This document shows positions 4,501-56,600 of a stretch of DNA of 64,000 bases, in pieces (position 1 is the stretch's first letter; the number at the start of each line of letters is the position of its first letter). Source of the stretch: Laetmonice hystrix (lineage: Eukaryota). The stretch is from positions 33,666,001 through 33,730,000 of the forward strand of contig OZ249439.1 in NCBI GenBank assembly GCA_965235115.1, written 5' to 3'. The notes beneath the pieces were generated by a model. The model was given only the letters and a program-made list of their open reading frames with translations. It did not search any database and was not told where the DNA came from. Position numbers and translations under genes: made by a program.

Positions 4501-5013
4501 GTGATCCCCCTCTAAGATTCTGAGCCCCACGCCTCCTCCCGTTTGGGAAAACACTGGATCCGCCCCTGGGTAGCAGTAGGTGAAATGAATTAACACCCAT
4601 AAGGCATGACCCCTTTCAAGGCACTAGCCAAGATTATTCTGGTCATTTCCGGTTTCGATGGACACCATATTGGATTTCGTGGCCATCTTGAAATTTGAAA
4701 GTTAGAAATGGATGCAGCCCTCGGATAACCCGCGGAATTTACTCAAATATCCTCAAAATTGGTCCACTGAGAGCTGAAATAAGCCCCTATAGTTACTTCC
4801 CGTTAAATGGCAGCCATCTTGGAATTGGCGGCCATCTTGATTTCGAATATGTCACATATACAATCAGCGTTCATAACAATCCCTAAAACCATTCAGAGAT
4901 TATAGAAATGTCGAAAAAAGAAAACATACCCAAAGGCAACTAGAATAACTTGCACACACATTGAATTTCTCAAACGGGTGAATCAGGGCGAATCCGACTA
5001 CGGAACGAAATTT

Positions 5014-5258
5014 TGATTTTCTCAAAAGGGCGAATTTGTGCTATGCATTTCCGGTGCTTGTATCTACAACTTCCGGTCGGACGAGTCCGAGGTACTTAAT
5101 GTTTTAAAAGGGGCTCAATGTTTATTTGCACAAAGCATACTTTACTTTGCAGTTTCATGTAATATTTGAGACAAAGAACCCGTCCAAACTTTAGCCACAT
5201 TTTTTATGCGATTTTCTCAAAACGTCAAAATTCGGGATTCGCCCCTTCGAGAAAATCA
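5014..5258. mobile_element. MITE-like inverted-repeat element
   Basis: TGATTTTCTCAAAAGGGCGAAT (5014-5035) pairs with ATTCGCCCCTTCGAGAAAATCA (5237-5258), 2 mismatches. No TSD established. Confidence 0.5.
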
Positions 5259-5989
5259 TAACGATATTTTCCTAATGCGGGTGATCCACACAGCCGGTTT
5301 TGTAGCGGTACACCAGCGGTCAAGCAGCGGTGGACCCTAGCGGTATACATCGCTGTTGTACCGCTGGTGTGATCAGTGTCGCAGTAGCGATGTCGTTACG
5401 GTACGTGAACCGGTCCGTGCTTACGGTATGTTAGCAGTAAGATTAAACATATTTGATATTTTTCGACTGCAGCGCGCTCCGGTACAGCACCGCTAGCGCG
5501 CCGATTCAACGTCTTTGTAGTGGATCAGGTGAAGCGGTGTATTTACGGTAATACAGTTTGCCTCAGCGAATCACATGTCCAGAAATTCATGACAGGCGCC
5601 TTGCGCATGCGCAGTTCCGGCCCATTGGGCCCACAGCCAAATCGAATGGAGAGATTATTTAAATTGCCTGTAGAGGGCGGTAAACTATAGCAGTGCCATT
5701 TGCCTGATCGCTGTTCGAACCAGAGAGGTTTTATAGGTATTCTCTCAAAAAATCGTAGCAATCTGACCATTTTTCCCTATTTACATGGTGCAGACCTGCC
5801 AACCTACAGAGAGAAGAAACCGAGAGATTTTTAAAAGTTGGCGTCCAAAAACCTGGAAATTGGGAGGAAAACCGGGCGATTTTTTGGGGAAAACCTGGAG
5901 ATTTTGGGGAAAAACCTGGAGGCTACATATTGATGAAATTATTGTCCGTAATAATTTGTAATTATTTGTTCTAATTCATTTCTTTCAAA

Positions 5990-33300: not shown

Positions 33301-33867
33301 CGGTAAGGGTCGCCTACTATAATGGCTATGTAGAAGCGGAGAACTACATGTGAACAGTACCGTATGGCTGTACAGTGTACATACGTGTTGGACCCAATTT
33401 ACTATTTGAAAAGTTAATTCTCTGTTTGTTGCTGAATTTCGTTTACCCATTTGGAGTTAATCATCTTGATGCCTTACATTACGATCCTACGATCATTCAA
33501 GCCAATCAAGATGGCCGTCCCCTAAGGACCTGTCGACGTGGTGTGGGAGGATTTTAGCCCAGCTACAAATGGATTTACGATCGTGATTAATTATTTTCAA
33601 CCAAAATGTTTATTAACTGATTGAGACCACATAGAATCTATTGATCATGTAAAACGCGGAACGGATTATCTCTCAGATCAAGCTTGAATCTATTCATATC
33701 GGACGATATTGGAGGAAATTCACCGGTGGCGCACGTAACCAAGGACGCACAATACACACACGTTTCCTTATACCGTGAGAACTCAAACAATCACCTCACC
33801 CGCGGTAATCACTTCAACTGCTTCTACTCAATGTGTTCCTTATACTGTAAACTCCGCACCACATACC

Positions 33868-35472
33868 ATGTCAAGCTTTCATCAACAGCCGAATGTTGCG
33901 AATGCCCAAATCAGGCCAACTTTTGCTCCACCACAATACCCGTTACCCATGGCTGGTACATTGCCCTTCACCGCCCAACAACAACCAGACATGTCTATGA
34001 TTCAAGATCAAAACAATGTACACACAAGACCTCCCACCCAACAATCGGGCCCACTGTTGGCAATGGGCTCTCAACCATGTGCTATGAATAAATCACAATG
34101 TCTAAACATACATCCAAATCTTGATGGGCTAACGCACAATGATAAAATGGAGCAGATGATGCTAAATCTCACCTCTGCCATATGCCAAGTTGCCTCCAGT
34201 ATGGAACAAATTAAAACGGCCAACAACTCGATGAGTCTTATGGTAGAACAATTATAGCGTGACGTCATAAACACTAAACAGGAACTTGATGGCACTCAAC
34301 AACTAGCACTTATCACCAGACAAGAACTTCAAGATCTCCAGGACCGAGTCACTCATTTGGACAATCGTGTTCTAACCAATGAACGTTTGGCCATGAACGC
34401 CACTTCAAGAACCTTATCCCTTGAAGGTAGAGTTACATCATCGGATCAGTTACCCCAGAATCAGCAAGCTACATATGGATCCACAAGTAACAGAGAGATG
34501 AGACTCATCATTAGAGGTGTCCCTGAGGATCCACAAGAGGATCTCGATGCTCTGGTGCAGCGCATCTTCACTACAATGAGCCTACCGTTTCGAGTCAGTG
34601 ATACAAAAGGTGTGACTCGATTAGGGAAACCCATTGAGAACAACACCTTCTCAATGGGTTCCCTACTCAACAGCAACGGTCACCCCAAATATGGACGACC
34701 CGTTATGTTGTCGCTCGACAAGATTCATCAGAAATACATAATCTTCTCACACCAGAAAAATCTGCGCAATCATGGCTTGTTTGGACGTGTGAGATTCTCT
34801 GATGACATGACTGAAGAAGAGTCTATGCACTACCGAGAAGCGAAGCAGATCTGCAATGCGATGAAACGTCACACAACTGATGTTAAGCTTCGCGGAACCT
34901 CAGTAATCATTGAGGGCAATGAATACCCATACTCCGACTTCAATAAACTGCCTTATGGTGTCACCCTCGAGTCCGCATCAACCATTGACACCTTGGACGG
35001 CATCGCTTTCCAGGGCCATTCCAGCCTTCTAAGCAATGTTTTTCCGTGTAAGTTGGAACTAAATGGAGAGAAAGCAAACAGTGTAGAGCAACTCTATGTT
35101 CTCAGAAAAGCGAAGGAATCCCTGGCCGACCCCACGCTAACTCAACAGATTAGAAATGCAACCTCCCCCTATCAGATAAAATGCCTCTCAAAAAGGATAC
35201 CATCTTCTGACAAATGGAATCAAATGTCTGTTGCAATCTTGAAGGAGTATGTGGAACTTAAATTCTTGAAATTCCCTGATCTCATGAGTAAACTCCAAGG
35301 ATGCAAGGGCGAGTTTATCTACGAGGCTACCCTTGAGAAACCCTATGGAGCTGGGTTTCTTAACGACGCACCCCAATTCTCGCATAATCAATTGAATGAT
35401 GAGTATGATAATTTAATGGGAGTTATCCTTCAAGACATTCGCAAGAAGCACAAACGTGTGGTTAAATCGTGA
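33868..35472 (+). pseudogene. LINE A ORF1: P/Q-rich N-terminus, coiled coil, RRM-like domain, C-terminal NADAR domain (about 35002-35445); one in-frame stop
   Basis: The ORF-track pieces 33775-34257 and 34357-35472 share a frame and are separated only by TAG at 34255-34257. ORF1-type motifs RLIIRGVPE, TRLGK, RPV, FSDDMT. NADAR motifs LSN.FPC, SVEQLY..RKA, W, LKF, IYEAT...YGAG, NLMGVILQDIR. Confidence 0.82.
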
Positions 35473-35737
35473 ACTGATCGTCAGTCCGCCTTTGTTTTGC
35501 CTATGGCCCTATATTTACAAACAAGCCCATAGTTTTATTTTGGTCAATGTATACACCCCTTGCACTGGGCCCTTACGTAATGGTTACGTCACGACTCTGC
35601 ATGAGTCCCACACCTTGGTTTTTACCTGAGCAGCGCCCGCACACGTACTCATTGCATTCCACCCGTCCACAAGCTGCCTTTCCCAGGATTGTATATTTAC
35701 TACCTAAATATTCGGACCTCTTTGCATATCGCCGGGA

Positions 35738-36385
35738 ATGTCCATACCACGCTTTCATTTCCTGCTTGCAGGCGACTCACGTTTACGAGGATGGCCTAGG
35801 GAAGTGAAGAGTCTTCAAAAGGAAATGGATTTATTTGACATCGAATTTCACTTCCACTATGTATCGGGCACTCGCTGCAAAAATCTAGTTGATGAAATCT
35901 ACATGTGCTCTGACTACAAGCAGTATGATGTTGTACATTTCTTAGCTGGGATAAACGAGTTCTCAACAAAACTACCGGGACACGATGTGCTACCGCGCTT
36001 CACAAATCCGAACACTGGCTTTGCGCACCTCGCTGAAGCGCGCGCGCGCCTGGATGCCATTGCCAGGTCTGTAGTGATTTGTGAGGTTATAGGCATGTCA
36101 TTTGAATTGTTTAATCACTCATTGGGAGGCTTTGGAAAACTCCAGACGGCGTTGAACAGTACTATCCTAGCAGTGAATGTCTTTGTTAGAGATCAAAACA
36201 CTGAACTTGGTGTTTTCACCCCATCGATGGAGCAACATGTACACAAAATCCGCCACGGAAAACGCAGCCATTTCTACTCTTCAACTCTCCAAGACGGCAT
36301 TCACTACACCAGTGACACCAAACGGAGATTCATCAAGCAAGTCCTCCGCACGGTGTACCAAAACATACATACCACATGCAATTAG
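35738..36385 (+). CDS. Stand-alone SGNH/GDSL-type esterase, 215 aa, intact
   Basis: Block I LLAGDSR, block II VSG, block III FLAGINE, block V LQDGIH: all four catalytic blocks present. ATG start and its own stop. Confidence 0.82.
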   Translation: MSIPRFHFLLAGDSRLRGWPREVKSLQKEMDLFDIEFHFHYVSGTRCKNLVDEIYMCSDYKQYDVVHFLAGINEFSTKLPGHDVLPRFTNPNTGFAHLAEARARLDAIARSVVICEVIGMSFELFNHSLGGFGKLQTALNSTILAVNVFVRDQNTELGVFTPSMEQHVHKIRHGKRSHFYSSTLQDGIHYTSDTKRRFIKQVLRTVYQNIHTTCN

Positions 36386-36890
36386 ATGATATATCACGGT
36401 CACAAGGACTCCTTTCGTGTGTAAATTTTTCTTTATTTTCTCACCAGACGTCGCCACCAACGAGTTGTGTTCCTATGACTCACCAAACTTTATACTACTG
36501 TCTGACACCAATACACTCTGCTTTGTGCCTGATATTTGCCATGAATTCGATACTTGAAGGGACAACCGATGTCAGTGAGTTACAACCTCCCTTTCTATCA
36601 TTTCGATACGTTCTATAATTTCTATAATGCTATATTTGTAATATTGCTCATTGCTATCAACCAACGGATATGTATATATATATTTGCTACAAGTATGGTT
36701 GACGAACGTATATCCGACGAAATTGCTGGGCGAAGAGTCCTCCCTCACCTGCCCCGTATCTGACCCTCTTGCTAGGTGTTAGATAATTACCTGTACTTCG
36801 GCACCCACCCCTGCAGCTTCTGCAATAGGGGAGTGGCACTGTTCCTACTATTGTTAGGCCTATATTCCTGGGTTATTCTCTTTTTCACAC

Positions 36891-39705
36891 ATGCCCCCAC
36901 CAGTATTATCGTCTAAAGGTTGCCGTATGGTGCATTTAAACTGCCAAAGCCTTGTTAACAAACCAAATTTAGTTAAACTTCATGTCACCCAATACTTACC
37001 GGACATATTTGGTTTATCAGAAACTTGGCTTAACACAGATCTACCTAACAGTCTATTTCTTATACCCAAATATGACTTCATCAGAGTTGATCGAGCCTGG
37101 AGTGCACCGGGGAAACCTAATATTAAGCGAGGAGGAGGAGTAGGCTTATACATCAAATCTGACTTACATTACTCCCAATTTGAATATGCTCACCTAAATA
37201 GTAGCACGAGTGACATTGAGATAGAGTGGGTAAGCATCCACCAACCTAACCAGAAAAAAATTGTAATTGGCAACCTTTATAGACCGCGCGACGGCGACAC
37301 CACAATATTTTGTAATTTATTGAGCAATATGGTCAACGAAATATCCTCAAGAAAGAATTCAGAAATTTTTGTATTAGGTGATTTCAACATCAATTATTCT
37401 AAAGCTGGGACACCTGCTAAACAAAACATCCAGGAATTTGAGTCAGTGACTGGTCTTAAACAACTCATTCATGAAACTACTAGATTTTCTGATTCTAACT
37501 CATGTATTGATCTGATTTTCTCGAACTCTGACACCATCTCACAGTCGGGTACTCTTCATATGAACATTAGCGATCACGAAGCCATTTTTGTTACAAGAAA
37601 GAAACTCGAGCATAAAGTCGGTCGCATAAACTCACAAGGGAGAACTTACTCGAAATACGACAGATTGAAATTTGTGGATTCACTGAGGAACATTGATTGG
37701 GAACCGTTTGATAGCATTACTGATCCGAATGAGGCATGGATCTTCTTGAAAGATACTATCACTAACGCCATAAATAAACAGTGTCCAATCAAACAAATTA
37801 AAATAAAAAATAAAAATGACCCATGGATGTCACAGGAACTAATTGAGCTAATAAATGATAAAGATAATGCCAGGCGGGAAAGCAAAAAAATCTAATCTGA
37901 CCGACGATTGGACAAGAGCACGGCGCCTTAAACATCTTGCAAACAGAGCCGTGAATAATGCCAAACGTGATTTTATCTTAGAGAATCTTCAAAATCAAAA
38001 TGATGCTAAAAGTTCTGGGAATGTATCAGTTCTATCCTTCCAAAAGACAATCCTCATACTACAATTAATCTCACGCATCAAGACACTGGACTCCCCATTG
38101 ACCCTGATAAGAGTGCCAGTACTTTAAATGAATTTTTCACGGGCATAGGTCCTAAATTAGCAGTCAAATTCACAGATCCTTGGGACACCGTCCTTCGCCG
38201 CTACTAAGTCAGAAATTTGTAATTGTGATATCAAAGTAGACGAAGTAAATCGTCCGCTTTAAACAACTTGTCTTCAATGATCCTTAAACACGCTTTCCTA
38301 GGTATACGGGATAAAATTACTCATTGTTTCAATTTGTCTTTAAAAACTGGAATTTTCCCTTTGGATTGGAAAATGGCCAAGGTAGTTCCCTTGTTCAAAG
38401 GTGGCGATGCAGCAAATGTCTCTAACTATCACCCCATATCTCTGTTACCCCTCCGAGGTAAACTACTAGAGAAATTGGTTCATACTCACCTTGAGAAATA
38501 TATTGAGGATCATCACATCCTAAGCATCCATCCGGGAGGTTTTAGACAAGGGCATTCAACACTTCAATCAATTGGAGAGCTAACTGATGATATTACCTAC
38601 AACATTAACAACCTGAATAGCACACTAGTAACTTTTATCGATCTCAAAAAAGCTTTTGATACAGTAGACCACGATATCATGCTTAAAAACCTACACAGAT
38701 TGGGTATCAAAGGCTCGACACATAACTGGTTAAGTTCGTATCTCTCCAATAGATCCCAACAAACAGTTGCAAATAACTCAACCTCAACAGCACTTCCCAT
38801 TAATTGCGGAGTGCCACAGGGTTCTATTTTAGGACCATTCCTCTTTCTAATTTATATTAATGACCTAGGTATGACTCTCCACTCAACATCTTCTAAACTT
38901 TATGCTGATGATACAGCTCTATACGTACATGGGGATAACATTCTGGATCTAGGAACTCGACTGCAGCAGGGCCTAGATGACCTTGACCACTGGTGCTCAC
39001 TGAACAAGTTGTCAATAAATGCTTCCAAGACTAAATGCATGTTTTTCCCGGCTAAGCGCCCAAGTTCAACTACTATACTCCCCAAATTAATCCTAAATGA
39101 TCAGACTTTAAACTATGTAAATCAATATAAATACCTAGGTGTCACTCTGGACAATAAATTGACTTTTCAACCTCATCTGCAACAGACAATAAAATTAACA
39201 TCCCATAAAATTTACCTCCTGGCCAAAATTCGACATCTCTTGACGGATGAAGCCGCATTGGCTGTCTACAGATCCAAGATAATTCCCTATTTCGACTATG
39301 GAGACATTCTTTTTCATAATAGCAGTGCTACAAAATTGAAGAAGCTTCAACGACTCCAAAACCGCGCCCTGCGAATTTGCCTGAGATCAGATCCACTCAC
39401 GCCCGTAGATATGCTACATAATAGAGCAAATATGCCATATTTATCAAATAGAAGAATTGCTCACATCAGGACTTTTGCCTTCAAAAGAGCCACGCTTCAA
39501 AAATACCTATGTCCCCCCACTAGGAATACAAGAGCAAATGCTGCAAAGCAATTAAAATTCTGGTTAGCACACAATAATCAAGTAGCCTGCTCAGTAAATA
39601 ACACATGCGCACGTGAATGGAATCTCCTATAAGAAACATTGTAAATTTGTATCATTCAAGCACTTCAAATATAGGCAGAAATTATGGCTGAAATCAACTA
39701 TACCA
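36891..39705 (+). pseudogene. LINE A ORF2: APE endonuclease + reverse transcriptase, frameshifted at about 37890 and 38130-38270
   Basis: HLNCQS, LSETWL, RGGGVGLY, GNLYRP, GDFN, CIDLIF, SDH; NYHPISLL, GFRQGHST, FIDLKKAFDTVDH, GVPQGSILGP, LYADDT, YKYLGVTLD. Confidence 0.93.
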
Positions 39706-39749
39706 ATAACCTAACCTGTGTTTAATACTTGCCTGTCACGCCCCATCAC

Positions 39750-40215
39750 CAGATTGTGTTCCTGTGACCTAAATGACTCAACACTGTCTACGGGTTGTCC
39801 ACATATGACCTCTGTAGTAACTTCCCTTCGCCAACGGACAACGCTACGCTCATTTTTCATCTTCGGGTCATGCTCTTGCAACCCTGATCTCCAGGATGTG
39901 CTCAGATGTCCTATGTTGATCCCTGTATTAGAAATTACTGTTGGCGTCATACTACACTCCACCAAATCTTGATCTTCGGGTTGTGTTCTTACGACCCTCA
40001 TCTCCATGATATGTTCTGATATCATATGAAATCTTATCGCCAGGTTGTGTTCATATGACCTAAACGACTCAACACTGTCTACGGGTTGTCCACATATGAC
40101 CCCTGTAGTAACTTCCCTTCGCCAACGGACAACGCTACGCTGATTTTTCATTTTCGGGTTGTGCTCTTGCGACCCTGATCTCCAGGATGTGTTCAGATGT
40201 CCTAAGTTGATCCCA
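39750..40215. repeat. Imperfect tandem duplication, period 291 bp, directly after LINE A ORF2
   Basis: CTCAACACTGTCTACGGGTTGTCCACATATGACC...GATCTCCAGGATGTG at 39777 and 40068. Confidence 0.85.
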
Positions 40216-43767: not shown

Positions 43768-46700
43768 GGGCCAGTTTTTCTAGAAATGTACAATTCGCCC
43801 TCAGCGGCCAAGAGAATATGGAATTTTTAAAACTTTTCCCAACCTATATCATTTGCATTGATTATGATAAAGGAACATTCTATCTTTCTGAAAAAGTTAA
43901 TTATACTCAGGAATTCCCATCCAGTCAGTTTTTAGAGCCCTCAAAAAAGATGTACTTCGTTTTCGTGGAACGTGAGTAAGATTTTGGACATTGCTTCAGA
44001 TATTTGCAATTTCCTTCTCTTGTATTTAAATGAACAAAGTTATATTTGGCCCATTAAATTTTAACAACATTCCCCTGATATGTGCCAAATATGAACAATA
44101 TGGGGCAAATATGAACTTATGAAACAGTTTGCCAAAATATAGGTCTGAAATTGCCAAAATTCCTGGATCATGTCCATCAGATATTCACAATATTCTATAT
44201 TCTCTAGTTCTTTTTAGGTGCCAAATATGCATGTTAAAACTGTTTTATTAACTTTTCACACATCTTATTATTATAAAACAAGCATTATATTTCATTTCTA
44301 TCCGATTTCCATGTTGCAGTAAGCTAATAAATTGACACCTATTATTATTACTCACGTTCCCAAAAAGGTTACTCACGTTCCGCCAAGTCCATACTTTTAT
44401 CAAAAGCAGACTAAATAAGATCGAAAACGCCCAAAAAGTTTTATTTAGACTGTAAACATATCAAATTTATTTTATCTGTGAAAACTTCATCAGAGGCACA
44501 TAAATTTCAAAAATGTTCCAACAAAGAAAAAACTTCACCGATGAAAATTACTTTGCAATTTCTCACATGAATTTTCTCCCTTGAAAAACTCTGAATAATA
44601 AAATATTTTTACACCAATTGCATGCTCAAACCCTCCTGTACATGATTCAATCAGTTAAAATTCGTTGATTTTGCATTACATGGCTGTGAAGCCCTTGGAA
44701 TAAGAACATTTGATATATTACTCACGTTCCCTAAAAAAGTTTCTCACGTTCCTCAAGGACATCAATTTTCCCAAAGGCACTTATGAAGGTCAAATATGAT
44801 CCAATACTCTCGAAAATTTATATTTAAACCATAAAAATGTTACATTCCTTGATTTTATCATGGAAAACTTCATCATAGCCCATAAATTCCCAATATGTTA
44901 CCTTGAAGAAGAGACTTTGCTGATTAAAATTATTTTGCAATTTCTCGCATGAATTTTCTCCCTTGAAAAACTTGGAATAACAAAATAGTTTTACAACAAT
45001 TGCATTCTCAAACCCTCATGTACATGATTCAATCAGTTCAAATTCGTTGACTTTGCCTTGCCCTGAACTCCCCCCCCCCCCTTCAAATTCGTTGACTTTG
45101 CCTTGCCCTGAACTACCCCCCCCCCCCCCCCCCGACTTCCGCCTTCTTCTTTAGCCTCTAGTCCAGCTGGGACTCTGTATTCATCCTCCTCCTCATGACT
45201 GCGAAACTTGTGACCTATGAAAATACTTAAACATGTTATAAAGGCTCAAACAAACAAAATGGAATATATACATGTTTAAAATAAGTCAATGTCTTGGTGG
45301 ACCCAGGATTGTTCCTATTTTTAATGTAAGATTAACAAGCTTGTGAAGCTTATAGCCCCCACCACGAACTATGGATTCTTGAAAAAACGATGCACGACTT
45401 CAATTGATCTTTGAAGGGCAAAGGAAATATTGTCAAATGAAACTTTGTAAACTTAGTAAAGTTCTATGCAGTTATATGTACAGCTTGATGGCGTTATCCG
45501 GCGTAAAGATGCATGTGTCTGCATTAACTATGCAGTTATGTACAGTTTGATAGTGTTATCCGACATGAAGTGTTGTAGACATGCTTGACCTCGATTGACC
45601 TTTAGAGGTCAGTTATGTACAGTTTGATAGCGTTGTCTGGCGTGAACCAACTGAGTAGGGACAAATTATCTGTGGGTCCAGGAACTATGCATACTTTTGG
45701 CACGCTTGTTGCCCCTCATGCCTTCTGTCAGCAAGAATGAAATCCAGAAAATGTTATTGCTTCGAATTTCTTTAAATCCAAGATGGCCACCAAGCAGCCA
45801 TTTTTAATGATATATTTGACCTGTGTCCTCCTTAGACTGTCCCTGGTTATTATGTAATGTTTCATGCAAGATTAGATGTTGTTATTTTCAACTGGTTTGG
45901 AGGTACAGGCCATTAAAATATGCATGACCTTGATTGACCTTTCAAGGTCGCTCAAGGTCATGGAAAATGACGCCAAATGAAACTTCATATATGACTTCCT
46001 ATCTATCAATAATAATAACTGTTGCCTTATCTTGCACCGTTTTCGAGATATGAGTCAAAGCAGTGTTATGGGGGGGGAGTAAAATATTAATATGGCCGCC
46101 ATGTCGCCATATTTCCTCTGATCTAGAAATACATTGGCATATACATTGCCCCTCATATACACCTTCTTTCCACCAAATTTGAAAGAAATCGGGATCGTTT
46201 TGTCTGAGTTATTGTTCCAAATGTGTTTACATCCAAGATGGCCACCACGCGGCCATTTTGACTGATGTCTAAAATATATTTGACCTGCCTCATCCGTGGA
46301 CTGTCCCGGATCATTATGTAATGTTTCATGCAAGATTATGTCGTTATCTTTAACTGTTTTGAAGATCCAGGCTATTGCAAATATGCATGACCTTGATTGA
46401 CCTTTCAAGGTCGCTCAAGGTCATCGAAAACGGCGCCAAATGAAACGTCATAATTATATGACTTCCTATCTGTCAATAATAATAACTATTGCCTTATCTT
46501 GCACCGTTTTGGAGATATGAGCCAAAGCAGTGTTATAGGGGGGAGGTAAAAATATTAATATGGCCGCCATGTCGCCATTTTTGCTCTGATCTGGCAATAC
46601 ATTGGCATATACATTGCCCCTCATATACACCTTCTTTCCACCAAATTTGAAAGAAATCGGGATCGTTTTGTGCGAGTTATTACTCCAAATGTGTTTACAT

Positions 46701-49452
46701 CCAAGATGGCCACCACGCGGCCATTTTGACTGATGTCAAAAATATCTTTGACCTGCCTCATCCGTGGACTTTCCCGGATCATTATGTAATGTTTCATGCA
46801 AGATTATGTCGTTATCTTTAACTGTTTTGAAGATCCAGGCTATTAAAAATATGTATGACCTTGATTGACCTTTCAAGGTCGCTCAAGGTCATCGAAAATG
46901 GCGCCAAATGAAACGTCATATATGACTTCCTATCTATCAATAATAGGAACTATTGCATCATCTTGCACCGTTTTCGAGATATAAGCCAAAACAGTGTCAT
47001 TGTGGGGGTCAAGAAACAAATATGGCCGCCATCTCGCCATTTTGGATCTGAATTGAAATTTTATTGTGATGCATATTGGCCCTCATTATGCCTCATCCCT
47101 GCACCATGTTTGAAAGAAATCGTCATTGTTTTGGCTGAGTTATTGCTCAAAATGTGTTTACACTCAAGATGGCCGCCAAGCGGCCATTTTGAATGATATC
47201 AAAAATCTGTTTGACGTGCATCATCCGCAGTTCATCCCTGATCCTTGTGTAAAGTTTCAAAGAAATCGACCCATACACTTCTGAGAAATCGCTGTCTACG
47301 GACATACGGAGGGACGGAGGGACGGACGGACGGAGGTCGAATTATAAGCCCCCCGTTGTGGGGGCTAAAAAGGAGGGACAGGCCTGTGGGACAGTCAAGT
47401 AGAATTGCCAAAAAAGTGCCACTTCAAAACCAATCAACTATCCAGGGGTTGGGGCCTGTTCTACTTTTGGAACGTGCTTTTTGCATCTCAAAAAGCCACC
47501 AGCCACTAGATAAGAGGCTGGACACACAAGGCCTGGCATTCCATTGTTACGCAGGGTCGGTATTCAACCCAGCCATGTCCAGCACCAAAAAATGAAATAT
47601 GTCAGAATGACCAAAAAAAATAAATTTCTAAATTTGGATTCATTTCTGTGGTATATCTAAAGGTAATGCATAAACACATCTGAATTTAGAATATTATTGG
47701 GATTGAAATATTTTTTCAATTTGTTGTTGTTGTTGTGGAGTGTTGTAGAGCAGTTGTGGAACGTGAGTAAGTTTTTTTTACCCAACGCTGAGAGAAGACA
47801 ACATATAAATATCTATTCAAATACATATATTTTGAATCTTGTCATCATTAGTATTATGAAATAACATAGAGGAAGTCATGTGAGCCTGCTGTCGTTTATA
47901 AAAAACAGGGTTTGTGATATTTGGAGGAACGTGAGACACTTTTCTTACTCACGTTCCCGATTCATGAATTTAATGCATTTTTCTCAGCGTTTACATTAAT
48001 GAAAAGGCCAAACATAGGTTCATTTTATAAAAGAGATAATGAACAAATGATTTAATTGTGTTTAATAATAAATGATAAGATAACAGCACTTCAAAACAGC
48101 GATGATATTGGACAATAAAGATAGAGGGAACGTGAGTAAGGGGTATAGTAAGGGGTATATTCGAACCTACGATGGACAACGTTAAACCACCTAAACGGAG
48201 ACACATTTATATCTTTATTCATTCATATTTATGCACAATTACTTGGCCAAAGTTGAAAAATAACATCAAATATAACCTCTGAAATGGCTCACTATTCATA
48301 TTACTCACGTTCCACTTCTCACGGAATGAAACGACCTTGAGTCGTTTGAAAGCAGCCAGCGAAATGCCTGCTGTATTACCGCTCAAGCACGAGGCACTAT
48401 TGGAAACATCAATCTTTCCCAAAGTTAAACAAACATTGCAAGAAGGGTTAATTACATTTCTATATTTTGTCAATTAGATCCAAAACGATGCCTTTCACAT
48501 CCGGACTGGCATTTGCCAACATGTATACATCCATAATTCTGTAGAAATGCTTTATAATGTTTCAAAAAGTGCTAGATACTTACCACGCTTTCGACTTTCC
48601 TCTTTACCACAACGCGCTGTGGCGTTCTATCCAGTGAACAGGGTAAAAATGCGGTGAGATGCTTTCCCCCATTACTCACGTTCCCATCTCTCTCACGTTC
48701 CAACATTCGAAATTTCTATCATAAATGCAGTTCAAAGGGCCGTTTCTTCTGAAGTAATCTTATTTATAGAATGAATGATCTAGCAAGGAATGTAATGAAA
48801 TGTTAAATGTGCAAGATATTATCTTATGTGGAAGTTAAATGAGATCTTCCATCTGAGGAACGTGAGAAACATTTTTGGTATAAAACCAGACTGCTGAGAT
48901 TTGGGAGTTAATAACTTTTTCACTGCTCTGGCTACACCAATAGGAATTTAACACAATATAGAGAAATACATGTAGATTACAGCAATGGATATACTTCTGT
49001 TTTATAAGTGTTCAATGTGATAAAGTATAATAGAAGAAAAAGAAGTTTTGCACGTTCCTAAAAATTGACACAAAATCTCCATCCTCCATCAAAAAAACCC
49101 CCACCACCTGGTTGGCCTGGAATACACCTTGAATGTCAATATAGCCATGATAGATCAATGAGCAAGTATCAAAATAAGGATCCCAATGTGTTTGTAAACG
49201 ATATAGGGTGTCAAAGCCTTAATTTATGAGCAAAAAAGGTAATTTTCCTCAATTTTTCAGTTTCTATTAGTTGCAGTTTGTTAGGAGTTGTACCAAAGTA
49301 TAACAATGTATATATTTTATGAAAGCTTAGGATGTCCTGCATGAAATGTTACCAACAAGGGGACCCTAGGCGGTAGTAGTCATGATTTACAGGCTTGTGA
49401 AGAGATCAAGGTGTGATTTTGGCCAATTGTACATTTCTAGAAAAACTGGCCC
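43768..49452. mobile_element. Non-autonomous TIR transposon with 4-bp TSD and GGG termini (Sola2-like)
   Basis: 28-bp perfect TIR GGGCCAGTTTTTCTAGAAATGTACAATT. ATGT at 43764-43767 and 49453-49456. About a dozen TTACTCACGTTCC / GGAACGTGAG motifs. No transposase ORF seen. The Sola2 label rests on the termini and TSD length only. Confidence 0.75.
45334..47369 (+). mobile_element. HINE/Helentron-associated element carrying about 3 tandem 465-bp units
   Basis: Starts AACAAG with TATAGCCCCC near 45351. GACCTTGATTGACCTTTCAAGGTCGCTCAAGGTCAT at 45926, 46389 and 46857. (GGAC/GGAG)n at about 47300-47337. 3' hairpin AGCCCC...GGGGCT at 47347-47364. Confidence 0.75.
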
Positions 49453-49950
49453 ATGTACCCATGCACAATTACATACAACGGAGGCTCTTACACTTCTGCA
49501 GAGCAGCTTTATCAAGCGGAGAAGGCGCGCTACTGCCACGACCCTGTATCCGAGGATCTGATTTGTAAGGCTGAAAGCCCGTACGAAGCCATGATACTTG
49601 GTAAACTAATCAAATCTACCGGCGAATGGGACAAAAACAAATTAAAGGTCATGAAACGGGTTGTCACACTTAAGTTCGATCAAAATGACGCCATTAGGCA
49701 GAAATTGCTTTCAACAGTTGGTAACCTGTATGAGGCCACTCTTGACAGGGTCTACGGTTGTGGGTTCACGCTCGGCCAGTGCCACATGATCTCACAAGAC
49801 AATGTCAAAAGCAACAATCACCTGGGCAAAATCCTGTGCGAATACAGAGGGGCATTGAAATATTGCTTATGTTAGTGTTAGTTAACTTGTAAAGCTTGTA
49901 ACGTTTATAGCTCGGCATTCGGGAACTAGATTAATATTAAGAACGGTTTA

Positions 49951-50580
49951 TTGTCATATATCTATATTGTTCAACATTTTGCCACACATCCAGAGCCTAA
50001 TCCCCTGTTTGTACCCTACTTACAGCATTCGAGCCAATCTATATTGGTCCTCGCCGACTCACGTGGGAGAAACCTGCAACAAGCTCTAAACAAAGAACTG
50101 AGCGGACAAAGCCTACCGGCCCGATTCAATGTACAAGTAAAGGTTTTCAGCGGGGCCAAAATCCAAGATTTGACAACCTATGCAAAGACCCACCTGGACT
50201 AGGCCCGCCCACTTGACTATATTTACCTGTTTGGAGGTGTAAACCACCTATCTGTGAAACATCGCTCAGGCGTAGTAACGGCCGCGTTTGATGACATTTC
50301 CAATCTTGTAGACACGATGACTGATTACTTCGAAAATGCCCGATCTGATTTATCTCCCTTTGCTAAGAATGTTGTGATTTGCCAGCTTGTGGGTATCAAC
50401 CTAGATGTATATAAGAAACAAAGCAACTCCCAAACCTTTGGGCAACATATTATCGACCAGTCCTTGCCTCACGTTAACCATGCCATTAACCTTATGAATC
50501 GTGATGGCAATGTTCGAAGTCCCTGGTTGCAAACCACGGTCCATGCTAAAATACATCATAGGCTCTGCCATAAGTTCCCA
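49951..50580 (+). pseudogene. LINE B SGNH esterase ORF; one in-frame stop, 3' end replaced by a tandem repeat
   Basis: ILVLADSR, VFSGA, YLFGGVN, VVICQL.G are collinear with copy A. TAG at 50200-50202 is in frame. No DxxH block seen. No in-frame ATG. Confidence 0.75.
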
Positions 50581-51215
50581 ATTACCGGGAATGTGTGTGT
50601 TTAATTATACATTGTTTGTTGAATCAAATCATATTGGGATCCCCTCAAGATTGAACCATCGATCTCACTGCAGAAGGTGGTACATTGACGGGGAATGGGT
50701 GTACTTGTATATACATTGTTTGCCGAGGTATACTGTGTTAAGATTCCCTCAAGTTGGAACCACCGATCTCACTGCAGAAGGTGGCCCAATTACCGGGAAT
50801 GTGTGTGTTTAATTATACATTGTTTGCTGAATCAAATCATATTGGGATCCCCTCAAGATTGAACCATCGATCTCACTGCAGAAGGTGGTACACTGACGGG
50901 GAATGGGTGTACTTGTATATACATTGTTTGCCGAGGTATACTGTGTTAAGATTCCCTCAAGTTGGAACCACCGATCTCACTGCAGAAGATGGCCCAATTA
51001 CCGGGAATATGTGTGTTTAATTATACATTGTTTGTTGAATCAAATCTTATTGGGATCCCCTCAAGATTGAACCATCGATCTCACTGCAGAAGGTGGTACA
51101 ATGGCGGGAATGGGAGTATTTTTGCTGTTAGACAAACTCAATCCCCTGTATAGTGTATAGCTTGTCTAAGACCTCACCAAGCCTGAATCACCGATCTCAC
51201 TGGAGAAGGTGGCCC
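50577..51215. repeat. 208-bp tandem repeat (about 2.6-3 copies), each unit a dimer of about 104-bp subunits
   Basis: CCCAATTACCGGGAAT at 50577, 50785 and 50993. CCTCAAG..GAACCA.CGATCTCACTGCAGAAG occurs twice per unit. Confidence 0.9.
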
Positions 51216-53698
51216 GGGCGAAATGCATTTATCTATCTGGAATGTGTCCCAAGGAGGATACCGACCCCAATTGTAGGATGTTGAGAACGTATCCAACTAA
51301 TGAAGGCGTGTAAATAGCTTAATATTGTTCACTGCTATATGACGCACGCGGCTTGTAGATAAATATGTATAATGCTGCTGATAGGTTTTCAAACGGAGGG
51401 GCTGGCTTCCACCCATGTGTAGTCGGCCACTAAGGTATTACGACTCTCTCATGACTCAGTCTGCTGTTTATGACCCTGGTAGCAACATATGCATACACCA
51501 AGGTCATCACAACATCAGTTTAGGTACTTATATTTGGGATACGATGAAGATAGCGTTAAACGTACGTAGAACATGCTATGCTGAATTCACTCTCACATGG
51601 AAGACCTAACATTGGTAACTAGTCGTAAGGGCCTACACTTAGCACATCTGAACACTAGGAGCATCTTCAGGAAGGTAGACCTTCTCAAAAACTATATGGC
51701 TAACTCGAGACTTGACGTTCTATCTATCTCGGAAACCTGGCTTAGCACTCAACTATCTGATAATATGATTTCCATCCCCGGCTTTAACCTAACTAGATCC
51801 GATAGAACCTGGAACTCTCAAGGAAACCATGGCTCCAGCCCCAAAAAAGGAGGGGGCGTTGCGACTTTTATTAGATCAGGGATTCCTTTCTCGGAAACCG
51901 ACCTATGCAATCTTAACCTCAGTAACTCAAATATCGAGACCCAATGGATAACGCTTAAGCCGATAAACCAACGAAAAATTATAGTCGCCACAGTGTACAG
52001 ACCTCCCCAAGGTAATCCCAAATCTTTTATAGAAGTATTGGCGCCGCCTTATCAGAAGTCAGTCTAACTAGGCAAGACGTCTTTGTCTTGGGCGACTTTA
52101 ACATTGACTACCTCGATAAAAAGAACGAAAACACAAAATTGTTATCTAACCTGATCAGATCTAATGGCCTCCGTCAACTGATTACCGAACCTACTAGATT
52201 ATCTGATAGGAGATGTAGCTGCCTGGACCTGATCCTGACCAACTCGGAATTTATTGCTAACTCAGGACTAGTGGACTGTAACATTAGTGATCACATTATG
52301 GTTTACGTGACTAGGAAGAAAGGAGTATCTGTTAAAAAGAAAGTGTCCTTTACCGGGAGATCCTACAGGCAATATAACGCTACGGATTTTAAAGATCGCC
52401 TTAGGGACATTGATTGGCGGGGATTCGATGCCGCAACACACCCAGATAGAGCCTGGAATATTCTCCTTAGTAGTATTAAGGAGATAATTGACAAGATGTG
52501 CCCATTAAAAATGTTTAAAGTCAAACAAGAAAAAGACCCTTGGATTAACCCTGAGCTACTCGAGCTTATTAAAGACAAGGACTATGCCCTGAAACGGGCT
52601 CGGCGCACTAAGAACCCGGAAGACCGTGAAATAGCTAGAACCTTAAGGAACCTTACACTGGGTAGAGTACGTAGGGCCAAGTCTGATTTTATTAAAGACA
52701 ATCTCGAAGCTAATAGTGACAACAGCAAGAAAGTCTGGCAAACAATTAAACAAGTGCTACCCAATAATAAATCGCAAGCAATTACCTTTAATCTTACTGA
52801 TGCAGAAACAGATAACATTGCAGAAACAGATAACATTGTTGAAGAACATCGCACTGCAGATTATGTAAATAACTTCTTTGTTAATATTGGACCTAAACTT
52901 GCGAGGCAGCACAATACCAGATGGGAGTACAAGGGTACAAAATGTGACCACAGAATGGGTGACATCCTGACAACCATTGACGAAGTCATTAGCCTGACAA
53001 AACAAATAAATATCTACAAAGCGTCGTCAGTTCATACCATTTCTAGTAAGGTTTTAAAGGATGCCTTCCTTGCTGTCCCCGATAAGATAGCTCGTCTGTT
53101 TAACCTATCATTCACGACCGGGATTTTTCCTCAAGACTGGAAGTGTGCTACCATTATTCCCTTTTCAAAAAGAGGGTAACAAAGCCGACGTTTCAAACCT
53201 AAGACCGGTCTCACTCCTCCCCATCCCAGGGAAACTAATGGAGAAGGTGGTAGGTAACAGACTTCGCAACCATCTCGAAGAAAATAACCTGCTAGACGAG
53301 CGACAAAGTGGATTCCGTCCGAACCACTCTACCACTGGCGCAGTGGTAAACCTTGTAGATAAACTTTTTAAAGCACTGAATGACGGAGGAGTCACGATTG
53401 CCACTTTCATAGACCTATCAAAAGCTTTTGATACGGTTAATCACTCGATTCTCTTAAAAAAAATAGATTTTTTAGGAGTCAAAGGTCTATCGCAACAATG
53501 GTTCACTGATTATCTCACCAACCGTTCCCAATGCACATCGTGCAACAACGCTCTCTCAGAGAAAAACGAAATAGTCTGTGGAGTACCGCAAGGATCGGTT
53601 CTGGACCCTCTACTCTTCCTAGTTTATGTAAATGATATGTTTACTGCCATACGTTTTTCAAACATCCAACTCCATGCAGATGATACCGTAGTCTTTAA

Positions 53699-56600
53699 AG
53701 CGCTTGTGCACAGTCGTTTTTCTGATGTAATACAATTCAGATCCTATTCCTAACAATGTTGGCGTTGGAATTTTAAAAATACATTGCACTATTTCTGAGA
53801 TATTGCGAAAAATAGCACTGATATTCCATAGCAACAGGCCCCTAGTTACGGGTCGCTATTAATCGGCTCCTGTCGGGAAACTTCGGCGCGTGACGACATA
53901 CTCAGAACACCGCTCGGCACGCTTGCTGTCACGACCCACCAGATCCAGTATGCCGAGTCGGTGTGTGGCTATGTTTTGCAGCCATTCTAGCAGTAAACAA
54001 TATTTGAATGGCCAAAGGACAAGGAAAGAACACACTGTGGTAGTGTGGACGATGTGTGCTGTGTGCACGACATGATTTTACAGAGGATTGCTTTGACAAC
54101 AGTAGGCTAACAACAGGCACTGGGCAGTGTACACCCAAGTCTACACGCTCTACAGACTACACTACCGTCTACAGTACAGTCAAGCCAAGGTCAGTTTTAC
54201 TAGACTGATTAGCCTAGATCAAAACTATAGTACTTAGGATCCTGTTTTTAGGATGTCTAGGCCCTAGATCTTATTCTAGACAGCTAGTCTAGATCGACTG
54301 CTGATTCTATCAGCTCCCCGGCAAGCGCTGAGCGGACAGGCTCACCGCAACAGGTAGTGGGCGGCGGACCGCATCCAGACAGTGCCCAGCACATCATCGG
54401 TCGCCGCTCGCCAGAGCCTAGCCCTAGCCCTAACGTGTTAGCCTTGGGGAATATCGATTCTTTACTGTCCAATTTAGCAAACCATCTGCAAGATCTTGTA
54501 AATAGATCTATTTGTTTTCTGTTTATTAATAATAATATTATACTGCAAGACAATGTAACACTGAGCTGGGGATCAAAGAAAACCAGCGGTGCCGATGAAC
54601 TCCAGCTGGAGGCAGGGTAATTTTATTTTTTTTTTAATTAAAAAAAAGAGATGAGGCTCTAAAATAGCCTAAATTACCTAAGCTTGGGGGTTTGTCACGT
54701 TTGAGCTTTGCCTCTCCTGTACCCCCAACCAGATCCTCTGTTTAACCACTGTGCTGGCAATGCAAATTCTGGTACATTTTATTTCCAGGTTATGTTGGAG
54801 ATTGTCTTCAAACAGTCCTGCCCCTCATTGACAAGCCTCAAAAACGTGGTTGTACACTGGCTGCTGCAACCTGACAAATGGACAGTCATCAGGGAGAAGA
54901 GATCACGTTTTGCCAAGCCCAAGGACTTTACTTCTCACATTCAGTGTAAATAAATTAAGCGGTTGACAAGTGTTTTATCAAATTTATGTGAATTTGGCGT
55001 AGTCTAATCGAATTTTGGAAATCGGAATGTTCCAGTCAGGAAGCCAGGTGTTGTTTCAGTTCAAGACGTGCTCTTGTTTCTGTTTGGACGAGGGTACTGA
55101 AATCCCGTGTGTGTGACACCGACAGTGTCTGTTGGAAATGCTTCCTAATTTAAGCTAGTAATAAGTGAAACATGATGGGTGGCCCCAACACCACCTGACA
55201 AACAGTCTGTAAGCCGTATAATGATAATTTCTGCAAAAAAGACGAAATATATATGGAAAAGGTTGTACATAAAAGTTCATAATAATTTAGGACTACAAAG
55301 GAAGGCATAATAAAAAAAAGAAGAAGTAAAGTGTAGCCTATACATTGTCGCTATGGTCTCTTTTCTTTCACATTTCAGGTTTAAATAGTGTAAAAGAAAT
55401 CCGTAAGTTGTTAACCTTCAAATACGGTACATTGAAACCAAATATTCTTGGAAAAAGGTATTTCTAACAATTTGGTTATCTTGTATAGACGGGACAGTGT
55501 ACTATAGAAACTATTGCACTGATGACAGTTAAAAAGAGCTATATTATAATACCGTATATGTCCTATTTGCCGCGCATGCGCGTGTGCAGAAGGGGGGTGC
55601 GCGGCAAATGAATTATTTTAACGTTAAGGGGGCATTTTCTTTCCAAATAGGTCCCCAATATGAGTCCCCAATATGAGTTTTCCCAAATTTCCACCCCTGA
55701 CAAACACATTGGGTTTAAAAAAATGCTGGGGTGCGCGGCGAATAGGAGGTGCGCGGCAAATAGGACATATACGGTACTAGTATATTCCTATCAAACACTG
55801 CAAAACATAAACTCAACTCAAAAGGAACAACCAGTATAATAAAATTGATTTTTGTAATTCTTGTAAATGGCCTGTTGTAAAATGTTCTATGAAATATACC
55901 GTGTATGGTGCTATCAAAACTATTGTGCCATAAATAATGCCTGTCCTAGGGGCCCACATAACCAGGTTTTTAGGCCCAAAAAATGTCAAGAAAGTTGTCT
56001 AAAACCGAACATCACATTGTAAGAATTAGAAATTGAGCAGGGTTCATAAATAAATAAAATTCTGATGATACGGGCACGTGGCCTATAAAGTATAATTAAT
56101 CAGCATATGGACGTGGCATAGACTGATGATAGAGTTAGTTATAAATGTGCTAAAACTCCAGCAATTGTCGTAGAACCATCACATCAAGGCAAACTGGCCT
56201 AAATCCAGGATGGAGTGTAATACATTGATGGTAGGGCTACACTTCCTTTCCCTAACCCATCTATTAACTTCGCTAGTTTTGAGGATGCAGGGACTGATCC
56301 TGGTACGTGTTGGGGGGGGGGGGGGTTATTTGTACTTGATGTTGTAAGTATTATCTGTGTCAATTTGTGTATGATGGGGTGAATCAGCAATGTGTATGTA
56401 TAAATGAAAAATAAAAAAATATTTTAAACAAATAAAAAGGAAAAAAAGGTTCTTAATATTTTTAAGACTCCTTTAAAGGGGGGGGCAGGGTTTCATATAG
56501 AGGACGGGGGGGGGGGTAAATCTCCTGCATAACTCGGAGGGATAATCCCCCCCCCCCAGCAACCTTTAATGGCTTTATTTTAAAAGCAGGCAAGCAACCG

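What the first reader, a model, noticed from the sequence alone, without database searches (positions are those of the whole stretch)
35738..36385. Three-ORF LINE: a free-standing SGNH esterase ORF between ORF1 and ORF2, in both families
In described CR1/L2 elements the esterase is part of ORF1. Here it is a separate ORF: 265 nt after the ORF1 stop and 505 nt before ORF2 in copy A, and 75 nt after ORF1 in copy B (49951-50580). Copy A keeps all four blocks (GDS, G, GxN, DGIH). A tricistronic LINE raises the question of how ORFs 2 and 3 are translated. It also pairs two hydrolases (acyl-ester and ADP-ribose), like the esterase and ADP-ribose-hydrolase pairing seen in some nidoviruses (inference).
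Basis: partly seen in the sequence, partly recalled or inferred. Interest (0 to 1): 0.7.

Follow-up and report, generated by a model that had tools for sequence, protein, structure and literature searches.

The report
Jumping gene with separate esterase gene
This animal's LINE jumping genes carry a small, separate enzyme gene (an SGNH esterase) between their two usual genes; the layout is conserved and under selection in many families and other datasets, and I found no description of it in the papers searched.

Summary
Window 35738-36385 is an intact 215-aa ORF. It starts 265 nt after the ORF1 stop and ends 505 nt before the ORF2 ATG. It carries all SGNH blocks (S14, G44, G71/N73, D186/H189). 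Its AlphaFold model (pLDDT 85.7) matches GDSL/SGNH esterases (Z 18.1, rmsd 2.3 A).

The separate ORF is not a decay artefact:
- In 30 loci from at least 16 diverged families, the esterase always sits in its own 220-283-aa frame, between a coiled-coil + NADAR ORF1 and an APE-RT ORF2. These loci come from this genome and from other public assemblies.
- Near-identical copies have all three ORFs intact.
- Synonymous sites are saturated while dN is 0.3-0.4.
- 144 of the 150 best matches in a search of 1.8 billion proteins are under 270 aa.

Copy A is a dead copy whose esterase ORF survived. Copy B is broken.

The ORF1-to-esterase gap is short (-11 to about 124 nt in intact families). That fits reinitiation but does not prove it. 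The esterase-to-ORF2 gap is long (0.3-2.1 kb), AUG-rich and usually repeat-bearing, so ORF2 expression is unexplained. RNA data could not be obtained.

The elements end in poly(A), which makes the CR1/L2 label doubtful. The nidovirus parallel is untested.

This scan already noted the same three-ORF layout elsewhere in this genome (s1-337654).

The parts
33775..35472 (+). ORF1 of copy A. Coiled-coil-type N-terminal part and C-terminal NADAR domain (about 35020-35448). Interrupted by one in-frame stop at 34255-34257.
   Evidence: NADAR E 1.4e-14, residues 222-364 of the 34357 ORF; open frame starts just after 34257; coiled-coil-like hits and NADAR in intact relatives.
35473..35737 (+). ORF1-to-esterase spacer of copy A. 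265 nt, with 4 ATGs and stops in all frames.
35738..36385 (+). Free-standing SGNH/GDSL esterase ORF, 215 aa, intact. Key residues: S14 (35777-35779), G44 (35867-35869), N73 (35954-35956), D186 (36293-36295), H189 (36302-36304).
36386..36890 (+). Esterase-to-ORF2 spacer of copy A. 505 nt, 7 ATGs, no tandem repeat in this copy.
36891..39632 (+). ORF2 of copy A. APE at 36891-37895 and RT at 38268-39632, in the same frame but separated by in-frame stops (broken).
49453..49875 (+). C-terminal NADAR part of ORF1 of copy B.
   Evidence: NADAR E 1.3e-23.
49930..50604 (+). Esterase of copy B, broken. No in-frame ATG, premature TAG at 50200-50202, and profile positions 184-217 (DGxH block) missing.
50577..51118 (+). 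208-nt tandem repeat (2.6 copies) in the esterase-to-ORF2 spacer of copy B. Similar arrays vary in copy number in relatives.
51597..53753 (+). ORF2 of copy B (APE and RT), split over several frames.

Best explanation
The ORF at 35738-36385 is the middle gene of a three-gene, poly(A)-tailed, APE-type LINE lineage.

The three genes are:
- ORF1, which encodes a coiled-coil protein ending in a NADAR domain.
- A separate ORF of about 215-250 aa, which encodes a small, basic, probably catalytically active SGNH acyl-esterase. It has a Ser14-Asp186-His189 triad and a Gly44/Asn73 oxyanion hole.
- ORF2, which encodes endonuclease plus reverse transcriptase.

The separation is the inherited, selected state of the lineage (shown). 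Copy A is a dead copy in which this ORF happens to remain intact, and copy B is broken.

Inferred: the esterase is translated from the full-length LINE RNA by ribosomes that terminate at the ORF1 stop and restart a short distance downstream. This would be translational coupling of the kind described for human L1 ORF2 and SART1. The enzyme then acts as an accessory factor in trans, by analogy with the lipid-binding ZfL2-1 ORF1 esterase.

ORF2, which lies 0.3-2.1 kb further on behind an AUG-rich and usually tandem-repeated spacer, must use another route: internal entry or a transcript from an internal promoter. That step is open.
For: Fold and motifs:
- Catalytic blocks are invariant across copies that are 22-37% identical.
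- AF2 model has pLDDT 85.7 and pTM 0.85.
- All top 50 Foldseek hits are GDSL/SGNH esterases, E about 3e-7.
- VIA-align gives Z 18.1, rmsd 2.3 A over 168 residues with 4rw0.
- The best profile hit in PDB sequences is a GDSL protein, E 0.0055.
- Relatives reach Pfam Lipase_GDSL_2.

Separate ORF conserved:
- None of 66 own-genome hits has an open frame above 293 aa.
- All 30 loci surveyed have ORF1(NADAR), then a stop, then the esterase frame, then ORF2.
- All three ORFs are intact in L032, L037, L043 and L045, and in four 99.8-99.9% identical 6,348-bp copies in ENA assemblies (ORFs of 428, 253 and 961 aa).
- The same order is seen in Logan runs ERR14368249 and ERR14707600.
- The exhaustive search gave 1,722 cluster representatives, and 144 of the top 150 are under 270 aa.

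Selection: dN is 0.32-0.43 with synonymous sites saturated in the closest cross-family pairs.

Coupling: the ORF1-stop-to-ATG distance is 1 nt in two families, an 11-nt overlap in one, and 31-124 nt in other intact families.

Charge: pI 7.1-9.8, mostly basic, like the ZfL2-1 esterase (PMC3905857).
Against:
- ATGs are not depleted in the short spacers (8 seen, 9.9 expected), so scanning-type reinitiation gets no support from that test.
- The copy-B family has no in-frame ATG before the catalytic Ser in any of 4 copies. This needs non-AUG restart, splicing, or no expression.
- Copy A's own spacer is long (265 nt, 4 ATGs), and its family has no second full copy to check it against.
- Enzymatic activity and substrate are untested.
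Confidence: 0.85

Rival explanations
1. The separate ORF is a decay artefact. The ancestral and functional state would be one ORF1 protein with a C-terminal esterase (the classical 'type IV' ORF1), split here by a mutation.
For: Copy A is a dead copy, with ORF1 and ORF2 both interrupted. One database protein, P0074 (414 aa), reads NADAR and esterase in one frame.
Against: The stop between the NADAR end and the esterase start is present in every one of 30 loci from at least 16 families, including young copies with all ORFs intact. Frame offsets differ among families: +1 in 9, +2 in 7, in frame in 2. P0074 comes from a single decayed copy with a broken ORF1 N-terminus, a truncated esterase and no ORF2.
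Confidence: 0.03
2. The esterase is made from a spliced or frameshifted RNA. Either an intron joins ORF1 (or a 5' leader with an ATG) to the esterase, as env is expressed in retroviruses, or ribosomes shift frame at the ORF1 end.
For: The copy-B family has no in-frame ATG and has a pyrimidine-rich CTTACAG just upstream of the esterase core in all 4 copies read. In-frame arrangement of ORF1 and esterase is rare (2 of 18 families).
Against: - Acceptor-like sites are not conserved across families.
- In families with a 1-nt spacer or an 11-nt overlap there is no room for an intron between the ORFs.
- In most families the esterase frame is closed by a stop between the ORF1 stop and the ATG, so there is no overlap for frameshifting.
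- None of the about 8 copies of the B family shows a processed junction, though only 4 upstream flanks could be read.
Confidence: 0.1
3. The element is functionally two units. An ORF1 + esterase bicistron is read from the full-length RNA, and ORF2 is read from a shorter transcript started by an internal promoter in the tandem-repeat spacer, like the monomer promoters of mouse L1.
For: The esterase-to-ORF2 spacer is 322-2,087 nt with 7-39 ATGs. In most families it holds tandem repeats of about 100-210 nt whose number varies between copies. One clade carries 2-7 copies of a highly conserved hairpin there.
Against: There is no transcript evidence. Copy A has no repeat in its spacer. cis-preference of ORF2p would then favour copying of the short RNA, yet full-length three-ORF copies are young and multiple.
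Confidence: 0.3
4. The esterase ORF is an unrelated host gene or another transposon that happens to lie inside the LINE.
For: An esterase of the same family also occurs as an ORF right after pol in a Ty3/gypsy-like LTR element, so the module does move between elements.
Against: It has the same position and orientation in every LINE locus. It lies inside the 6,348-bp unit shared by near-identical copies bounded by a poly(A) tail. No separate repeat boundaries surround it.
Confidence: 0.01

Closest known systems
Esterase-type ('type IV') ORF1p of CR1, L2 and RTEX LINEs, e.g. zebrafish ZfL2-1 (PDB 4c1b; PMC3905857, PMC4120745, Kapitonov and Jurka 2003)
   Same: An SGNH esterase encoded by a LINE upstream of ORF2. 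The catalytic S/G/N/H residues are kept, the protein is basic, and it is presumed to be an accessory enzyme of the RNP.
   Different: - There the esterase is the only ORF1 protein, joined to a coiled coil, and the element is bicistronic.
- Here it is a second, separate ORF without a coiled coil, downstream of a coiled-coil + NADAR ORF1.
- Similarity to 4c1b is not significant (E 1.4).
- The 'transposon-specific' His two residues before block III is not kept (weak alignment).
- These elements end in poly(A).
GDSL esterase ORF3 of bdelloid rotifer Vesta LTR retrotransposons and Athena elements (PMC5408684)
   Same: A free-standing GDSL/SGNH ORF carried as an extra gene by retroelements, and shared between element classes. 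A homolog of the present family sits 10 nt after pol in a Ty3/gypsy-like element (L058/L059).
   Different: There it lies downstream of pol in LTR or Penelope-like elements. Here it lies between ORF1 and ORF2 of a LINE. Homology to the rotifer ORFs was not tested.
Bicistronic LINE translation: human L1 ORF2 reinitiation and SART1 UAAUG coupling (from my own knowledge: Alisch et al. 2006; Kojima et al. 2005)
   Same: Short or overlapping stop-start junctions (1 nt, -11 nt, 31-124 nt) between ORF1 and the next ORF. One family has no AUG, which recalls AUG-independent L1 ORF2 initiation.
   Different: A third cistron follows after a long, AUG-rich, repeat-bearing spacer. No described LINE mechanism covers that.
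NADAR-ORF1 LINEs noted earlier in this scan (s1-353725, s1-353736, s1-337654)
   Same: Same elements and same genome. The three-ORF layout was already noted on another piece.
   Different: This report adds the fold proof, the survey across families and other assemblies, the selection test, the junction anatomy and the exhaustive length distribution.

Membership tests
SGNH/GDSL hydrolase superfamily | Block I with the nucleophile Ser (GDS-type) | tested here: met
   D13-S14-R15 are invariant in 10 diverged copies. The motif aligns to the GDS of 7ddy.
SGNH/GDSL hydrolase superfamily | Block II Gly and block III GxN (oxyanion hole) | tested here: met
   G44 and G71 are invariant; N73 is present in 90% of rows.
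SGNH/GDSL hydrolase superfamily | Block V DxxH (acid and base of the triad) | tested here: met
   D186, G187 and H189 are invariant.
SGNH/GDSL hydrolase superfamily | Three-layer alpha/beta/alpha flavodoxin-like fold | tested here: met
   AF2 model pLDDT 85.7. Foldseek prob 1.0 to 50 of 50 GDSL/SGNH entries. Z 18.1, rmsd 2.3 A, 168 residues aligned.
SGNH/GDSL hydrolase superfamily | Hydrolytic activity on an ester substrate | not testable with these tools
   Needs recombinant protein and an assay.
LINE esterase-type (type IV) ORF1p | Esterase is part of the first ORF, preceded by a coiled coil | tested here: not met
   The esterase is in its own 220-283-aa frame in 30 of 30 loci. The coiled coil lies in the separate ORF1.
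LINE esterase-type (type IV) ORF1p | Significant sequence relation to ZfL2-1-type esterases, including the transposon-specific His before block III | tested here: not met
   Family profile against 4c1b gives E 1.4. The position of that His holds hydrophobic residues here. The alignment is weak, so this is a soft negative.
APE-type non-LTR retrotransposon (LINE) | ORF2 with an apurinic-type endonuclease and a reverse transcriptase | tested here: met
   Exo_endo_phos E 2.3e-11 and RVT_1 E 2.7e-37 in copy A. Relatives have an intact ORF2 of 960-1,020 aa.
APE-type non-LTR retrotransposon (LINE) | 3' poly(A) or repeat tail, 5' truncated copies, no LTRs | tested here: met
   AATAAA plus A15-A29 tails, with flanks that differ after the tail, and a 5'-truncated copy L053. 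This was shown in relatives, not in copy A itself.
CR1/L2 clade | 3' end with short microsatellite-like repeats rather than poly(A); RT groups with CR1/L2 | tested here: inconclusive
   Relatives end in poly(A). Among CR1-group elements only Zenon is reported to do so (PMC13343379). RT phylogeny could not be run for lack of reference sequences. ORF2 is equally distant from human L1 and R2.
Retroelement free-standing GDSL ORF (Vesta/Athena type) | Separate GDSL ORF within a retroelement, shared between element classes | tested here: met
   Separate ORF in LINEs. A homolog sits after pol of an LTR element and groups beside the LINE esterases, 93/90 support on a long branch. Homology to the rotifer ORFs themselves was not tested.

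The most novel reading that the evidence does not exclude
A large, essentially undescribed lineage of tricistronic LINEs in (probably marine) invertebrates carries two enzymes beside the replicase: a NADAR ADP-ribose-processing domain on ORF1p and a stand-alone SGNH esterase. The two would act together as a counter-defence or template-repair pair, for example by removing ADP-ribosyl or acyl marks placed on the element's RNA, DNA or RNP. The third cistron would be expressed through a dedicated structured-RNA or repeat module in the long spacer. The esterase gene would be a cassette that has also moved into LTR retrotransposons.
Probability: 0.12. Interest if true: 0.8.

Novelty: new variant of a known kind. 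Interest (0 to 1): 0.55.

Why it matters
LINE esterases are known only as the sole ORF1 protein of bicistronic elements, and their role is unsettled. Here the esterase has been kept for a long time as a separate protein next to a distinct coiled-coil ORF1 protein. This argues that it works as a free accessory enzyme and not as the RNP scaffold.

The layout also gives a natural three-cistron eukaryotic RNA in which two different downstream-ORF expression problems can be studied: a short gap and a long repeat-rich gap. The family is large (1,722 cluster representatives) yet unnamed in public protein sources, so annotation pipelines miss it.

Tried and rejected
- A single-sequence word search with copy A's esterase found nothing. 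Only the 10-row profile reached relatives.
- Pfam does not recognise copy A's esterase at E 0.1 or better.
- I first thought the esterase always lay in the +1 frame relative to ORF1 (8 of 10 families). A wider sample gave +1 in 9, +2 in 7 and in frame in 2, tracking the two esterase clades, so I dropped it as a rule.
- The ATG-depletion test on the short spacers was negative.
- dN/dS could not be given as a number because synonymous sites are saturated.
- Rfam found no family in six loci.
- The conserved spacer hairpin is absent from the window.
- Literature searches for a three-ORF LINE with a separate esterase found none.
Copies were only compared.

Full report
**The observation**

Between 33.8 and 39.6 kb the window holds a LINE, copy A. 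Its ORF1 ends in a Pfam NADAR domain (E 1.4e-14). Its ORF2 carries an APE endonuclease (E 2.3e-11) and a reverse transcriptase (E 2.7e-37).

Between them lies an intact ATG-to-TAG ORF at 35738-36385, 215 aa long.

Copy A is otherwise dead. ORF1 has an in-frame stop at 34255-34257, and the APE and RT parts of ORF2 are separated by in-frame stops.

Copy B (49.4-53.8 kb) has the same order. Its esterase frame (49930-50604) has three defects:
- It has no in-frame ATG.
- It has a premature TAG at 50200-50202.
- It loses the last 35 profile positions, including the DGxH block, where a 208-nt tandem array begins (50577-51118).

**It is an SGNH esterase**

Pfam does not see copy A's protein, and a single-sequence search found nothing. 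The genome itself holds 66 relatives at E 1e-3 or better.

An alignment of ten copies that share only 22-37% identity keeps these positions invariant: D13-S14-R15, G44, G71, D186-G187-H189. N73 is present in 90% of rows. These are the four SGNH blocks.

- The AlphaFold model built on that alignment has pLDDT 85.7 and pTM 0.85.
- All 50 best Foldseek matches in the PDB are GDSL/SGNH esterases, with probability 1.0 and E about 3e-7.
- The second-look aligner gives Z 18.1, rmsd 2.3 A over 168 residues with 4rw0.
- By sequence, the profile's best PDB hit is a GDSL lipolytic protein (7ddy, E 0.0055).
- The zebrafish LINE ORF1 esterase (4c1b) appears only at E 1.4.
- Several relatives reach Pfam Lipase_GDSL or Lipase_GDSL_2.

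**The separate ORF is the conserved state**

I fetched 20 genomic loci with flanks and 11 loci from other public assemblies.

In every LINE locus the order is ORF1 with NADAR, a stop, the esterase in its own stop-to-stop frame of 220-283 aa, a long spacer, then APE-RT. None of the 66 hits lies in an open frame longer than 293 aa. The 150 hits show the same.

Several families have all three ORFs intact:
- L032: open frames (stop to stop) of 496, 231 and 1,020 aa.
- L037: 501, 232 and 964 aa.
- L043 and L045.

In ENA assemblies four copies of a 6,348-bp element are 99.8-99.9% identical. They carry ORFs of 428, 253 and 961 aa and end in AATAAA plus a poly(A) run. One of the four is 5' truncated. 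Logan assemblies of two other runs show NADAR-ORF1 followed by the esterase after 38-56 nt.

The exhaustive profile search found 1,722 cluster representatives at E 1e-3 or better and 874 at 1e-10 or better. Of the best 150, 144 are under 270 aa. The exceptions are multi-esterase models and one 414-aa NADAR-esterase reading, P0074. P0074 comes from a single decayed copy with a broken ORF1, a truncated esterase and no ORF2. None of the cluster members carries a name in any source.

**Selection**

Between the closest cross-family pairs, non-synonymous divergence is 0.32-0.43 while synonymous sites are saturated. The frame has therefore been translated and constrained for a long time. The proteins are mostly basic, with pI 7.1-9.8.

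**Junctions**

The distance from the ORF1 stop to the esterase ATG varies:
- 1 nt in two unrelated families (stop, one base, ATG).
- An 11-nt overlap in one family.
- 31 to 124 nt in the other intact families.
- 200-365 nt in decayed ones, including copy A.

The frame offset is +1 in 9 families, +2 in 7 and in frame in 2. It follows the two main esterase clades, so there is no universal frame rule. In most families there is also no overlap in which a frameshift could act.

ATGs are not depleted in the short spacers: 8 seen against 9.9 expected.

The copy-B family has about 8 copies at 97-100% identity. In all four copies read it has no in-frame ATG before the catalytic Ser.

The distance from the esterase stop to the ORF2 ATG is 322-2,087 nt, with 7-39 ATGs. 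In most families this spacer holds tandem repeats whose number differs between copies.

**What I conclude about mechanism**

Shown: a three-ORF LINE lineage in which the esterase is a separate, selected gene.

Inferred: the esterase is read from the full-length RNA by termination-reinitiation after ORF1. The basis is the short or overlapping junctions, by analogy with L1 and SART1, which I cite from my own knowledge. I put this at roughly 50%.

Splicing or another route remains possible, especially for the ATG-less B family.

How ORF2 is reached across the long spacer is open. The candidates are an internal promoter in the repeats or internal ribosome entry.

I could not get RNA evidence.

**Comparison with what is known**

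Esterases in LINEs are described as the sole ORF1 protein of bicistronic CR1, L2 and RTEX elements. There they are preceded by a coiled coil and lack RNA-binding domains (PMC3905857, PMC4120745, PMC13343379, bioRxiv 10.1101/788562).

Free-standing GDSL ORFs are described for rotifer LTR elements and Athena (PMC5408684).

Five literature searches found no LINE with ORF1 plus a separate esterase ORF. Repbase could not be consulted.

The present elements end in poly(A). Among CR1-group elements that is reported only for Zenon (PMC13343379). ORF2 is equally distant from human L1 and R2. The clade is therefore unresolved and the CR1/L2 framing is doubtful.

A homolog of this esterase sits 10 nt after pol in a Ty3/gypsy-like element. 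It groups beside LINE esterases in a tree, with 93/90 support on a long branch and midpoint rooting only. This fits exchange of the module between element classes.

**The NADAR pairing**

Every LINE locus with this esterase has a NADAR ORF1. However, NADAR candidates outnumber esterase candidates 741 to 243, and only about a dozen of the 150 best NADAR hits are followed by a listed esterase hit. Both lists are capped at 150 scored. The pairing therefore looks optional.

Nidoviruses do carry NADAR and macro domains (PMC12377751, PMC11848433). Neither paper mentions an esterase pairing, so that parallel stays an analogy.

**Earlier notes of this scan**

The same three-ORF layout was already noted on another piece of this genome (s1-337654). 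The NADAR-ORF1 fusion was noted on this window (s1-353725, s1-353736). My results agree with those notes and extend them.

Copies were only compared.

Noticed in passing
L046:5642-5660 and 5971-5989; L048:4958-5702 (six copies); L051:7061-7079; own genome C2:17406641, C2:40703491, C3:4047957, C4:34744443, C6:16017632: A hairpin core of about 30 nt, containing GCGTTTCGTTTGAGACCGC, is repeated 2-7 times in the esterase-to-ORF2 spacer of three diverged LINE families. It is 93-100% identical between them although synonymous sites of the neighbouring esterase ORFs are saturated. The basal stems differ but stay complementary (fold z -3 to -4). There are 23 hits in the genome against 0 in the reversed control, no Rfam match, and none in the window.
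   Followed up: partly
window 49930-50060; L044:4350-4476; L045:4656-4782; L047:4418-4544: In the copy-B family the esterase open frame has no in-frame ATG before the catalytic Ser in any of four copies, although ORF1 and ORF2 are intact in L045.
   Followed up: partly
L058:4962-5693; L059:1306-2037: A 243-aa homolog of the esterase lies 10 nt after the pol gene of a Ty3/gypsy-like LTR retrotransposon (gag with zf-CCHC, pol with RT-RNaseH-integrase) in two Logan runs. In the esterase tree it groups beside LINE esterases.
   Followed up: partly
G000:C1:23020367-23020792; G000:C8:28856722-28857147: Two NADAR matches lie in open frames of 1,660 and 1,649 aa. NADAR may be fused to a much longer protein, possibly ORF2, in another lineage.
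   Followed up: no
L045:5464-6470; L032:5796-6159; L035 (reverse strand) 4863-5273; window 50577-51118: Tandem repeats of about 100-210 nt start shortly after the esterase stop in several families, and their copy number differs between near-identical copies. This recalls the monomer promoters of mouse L1.
   Followed up: partly
window 45810-47227: A 468-nt tandem repeat with 3.0 copies at 87% match, between the two LINE copies and unrelated to the finding.
   Followed up: no
window 39711-40200: Just after the RT stop of copy A, a stretch of about 300 nt is duplicated: 39760-39910 resembles 40050-40200. No poly(A) tail is recognisable for copy A.
   Followed up: no
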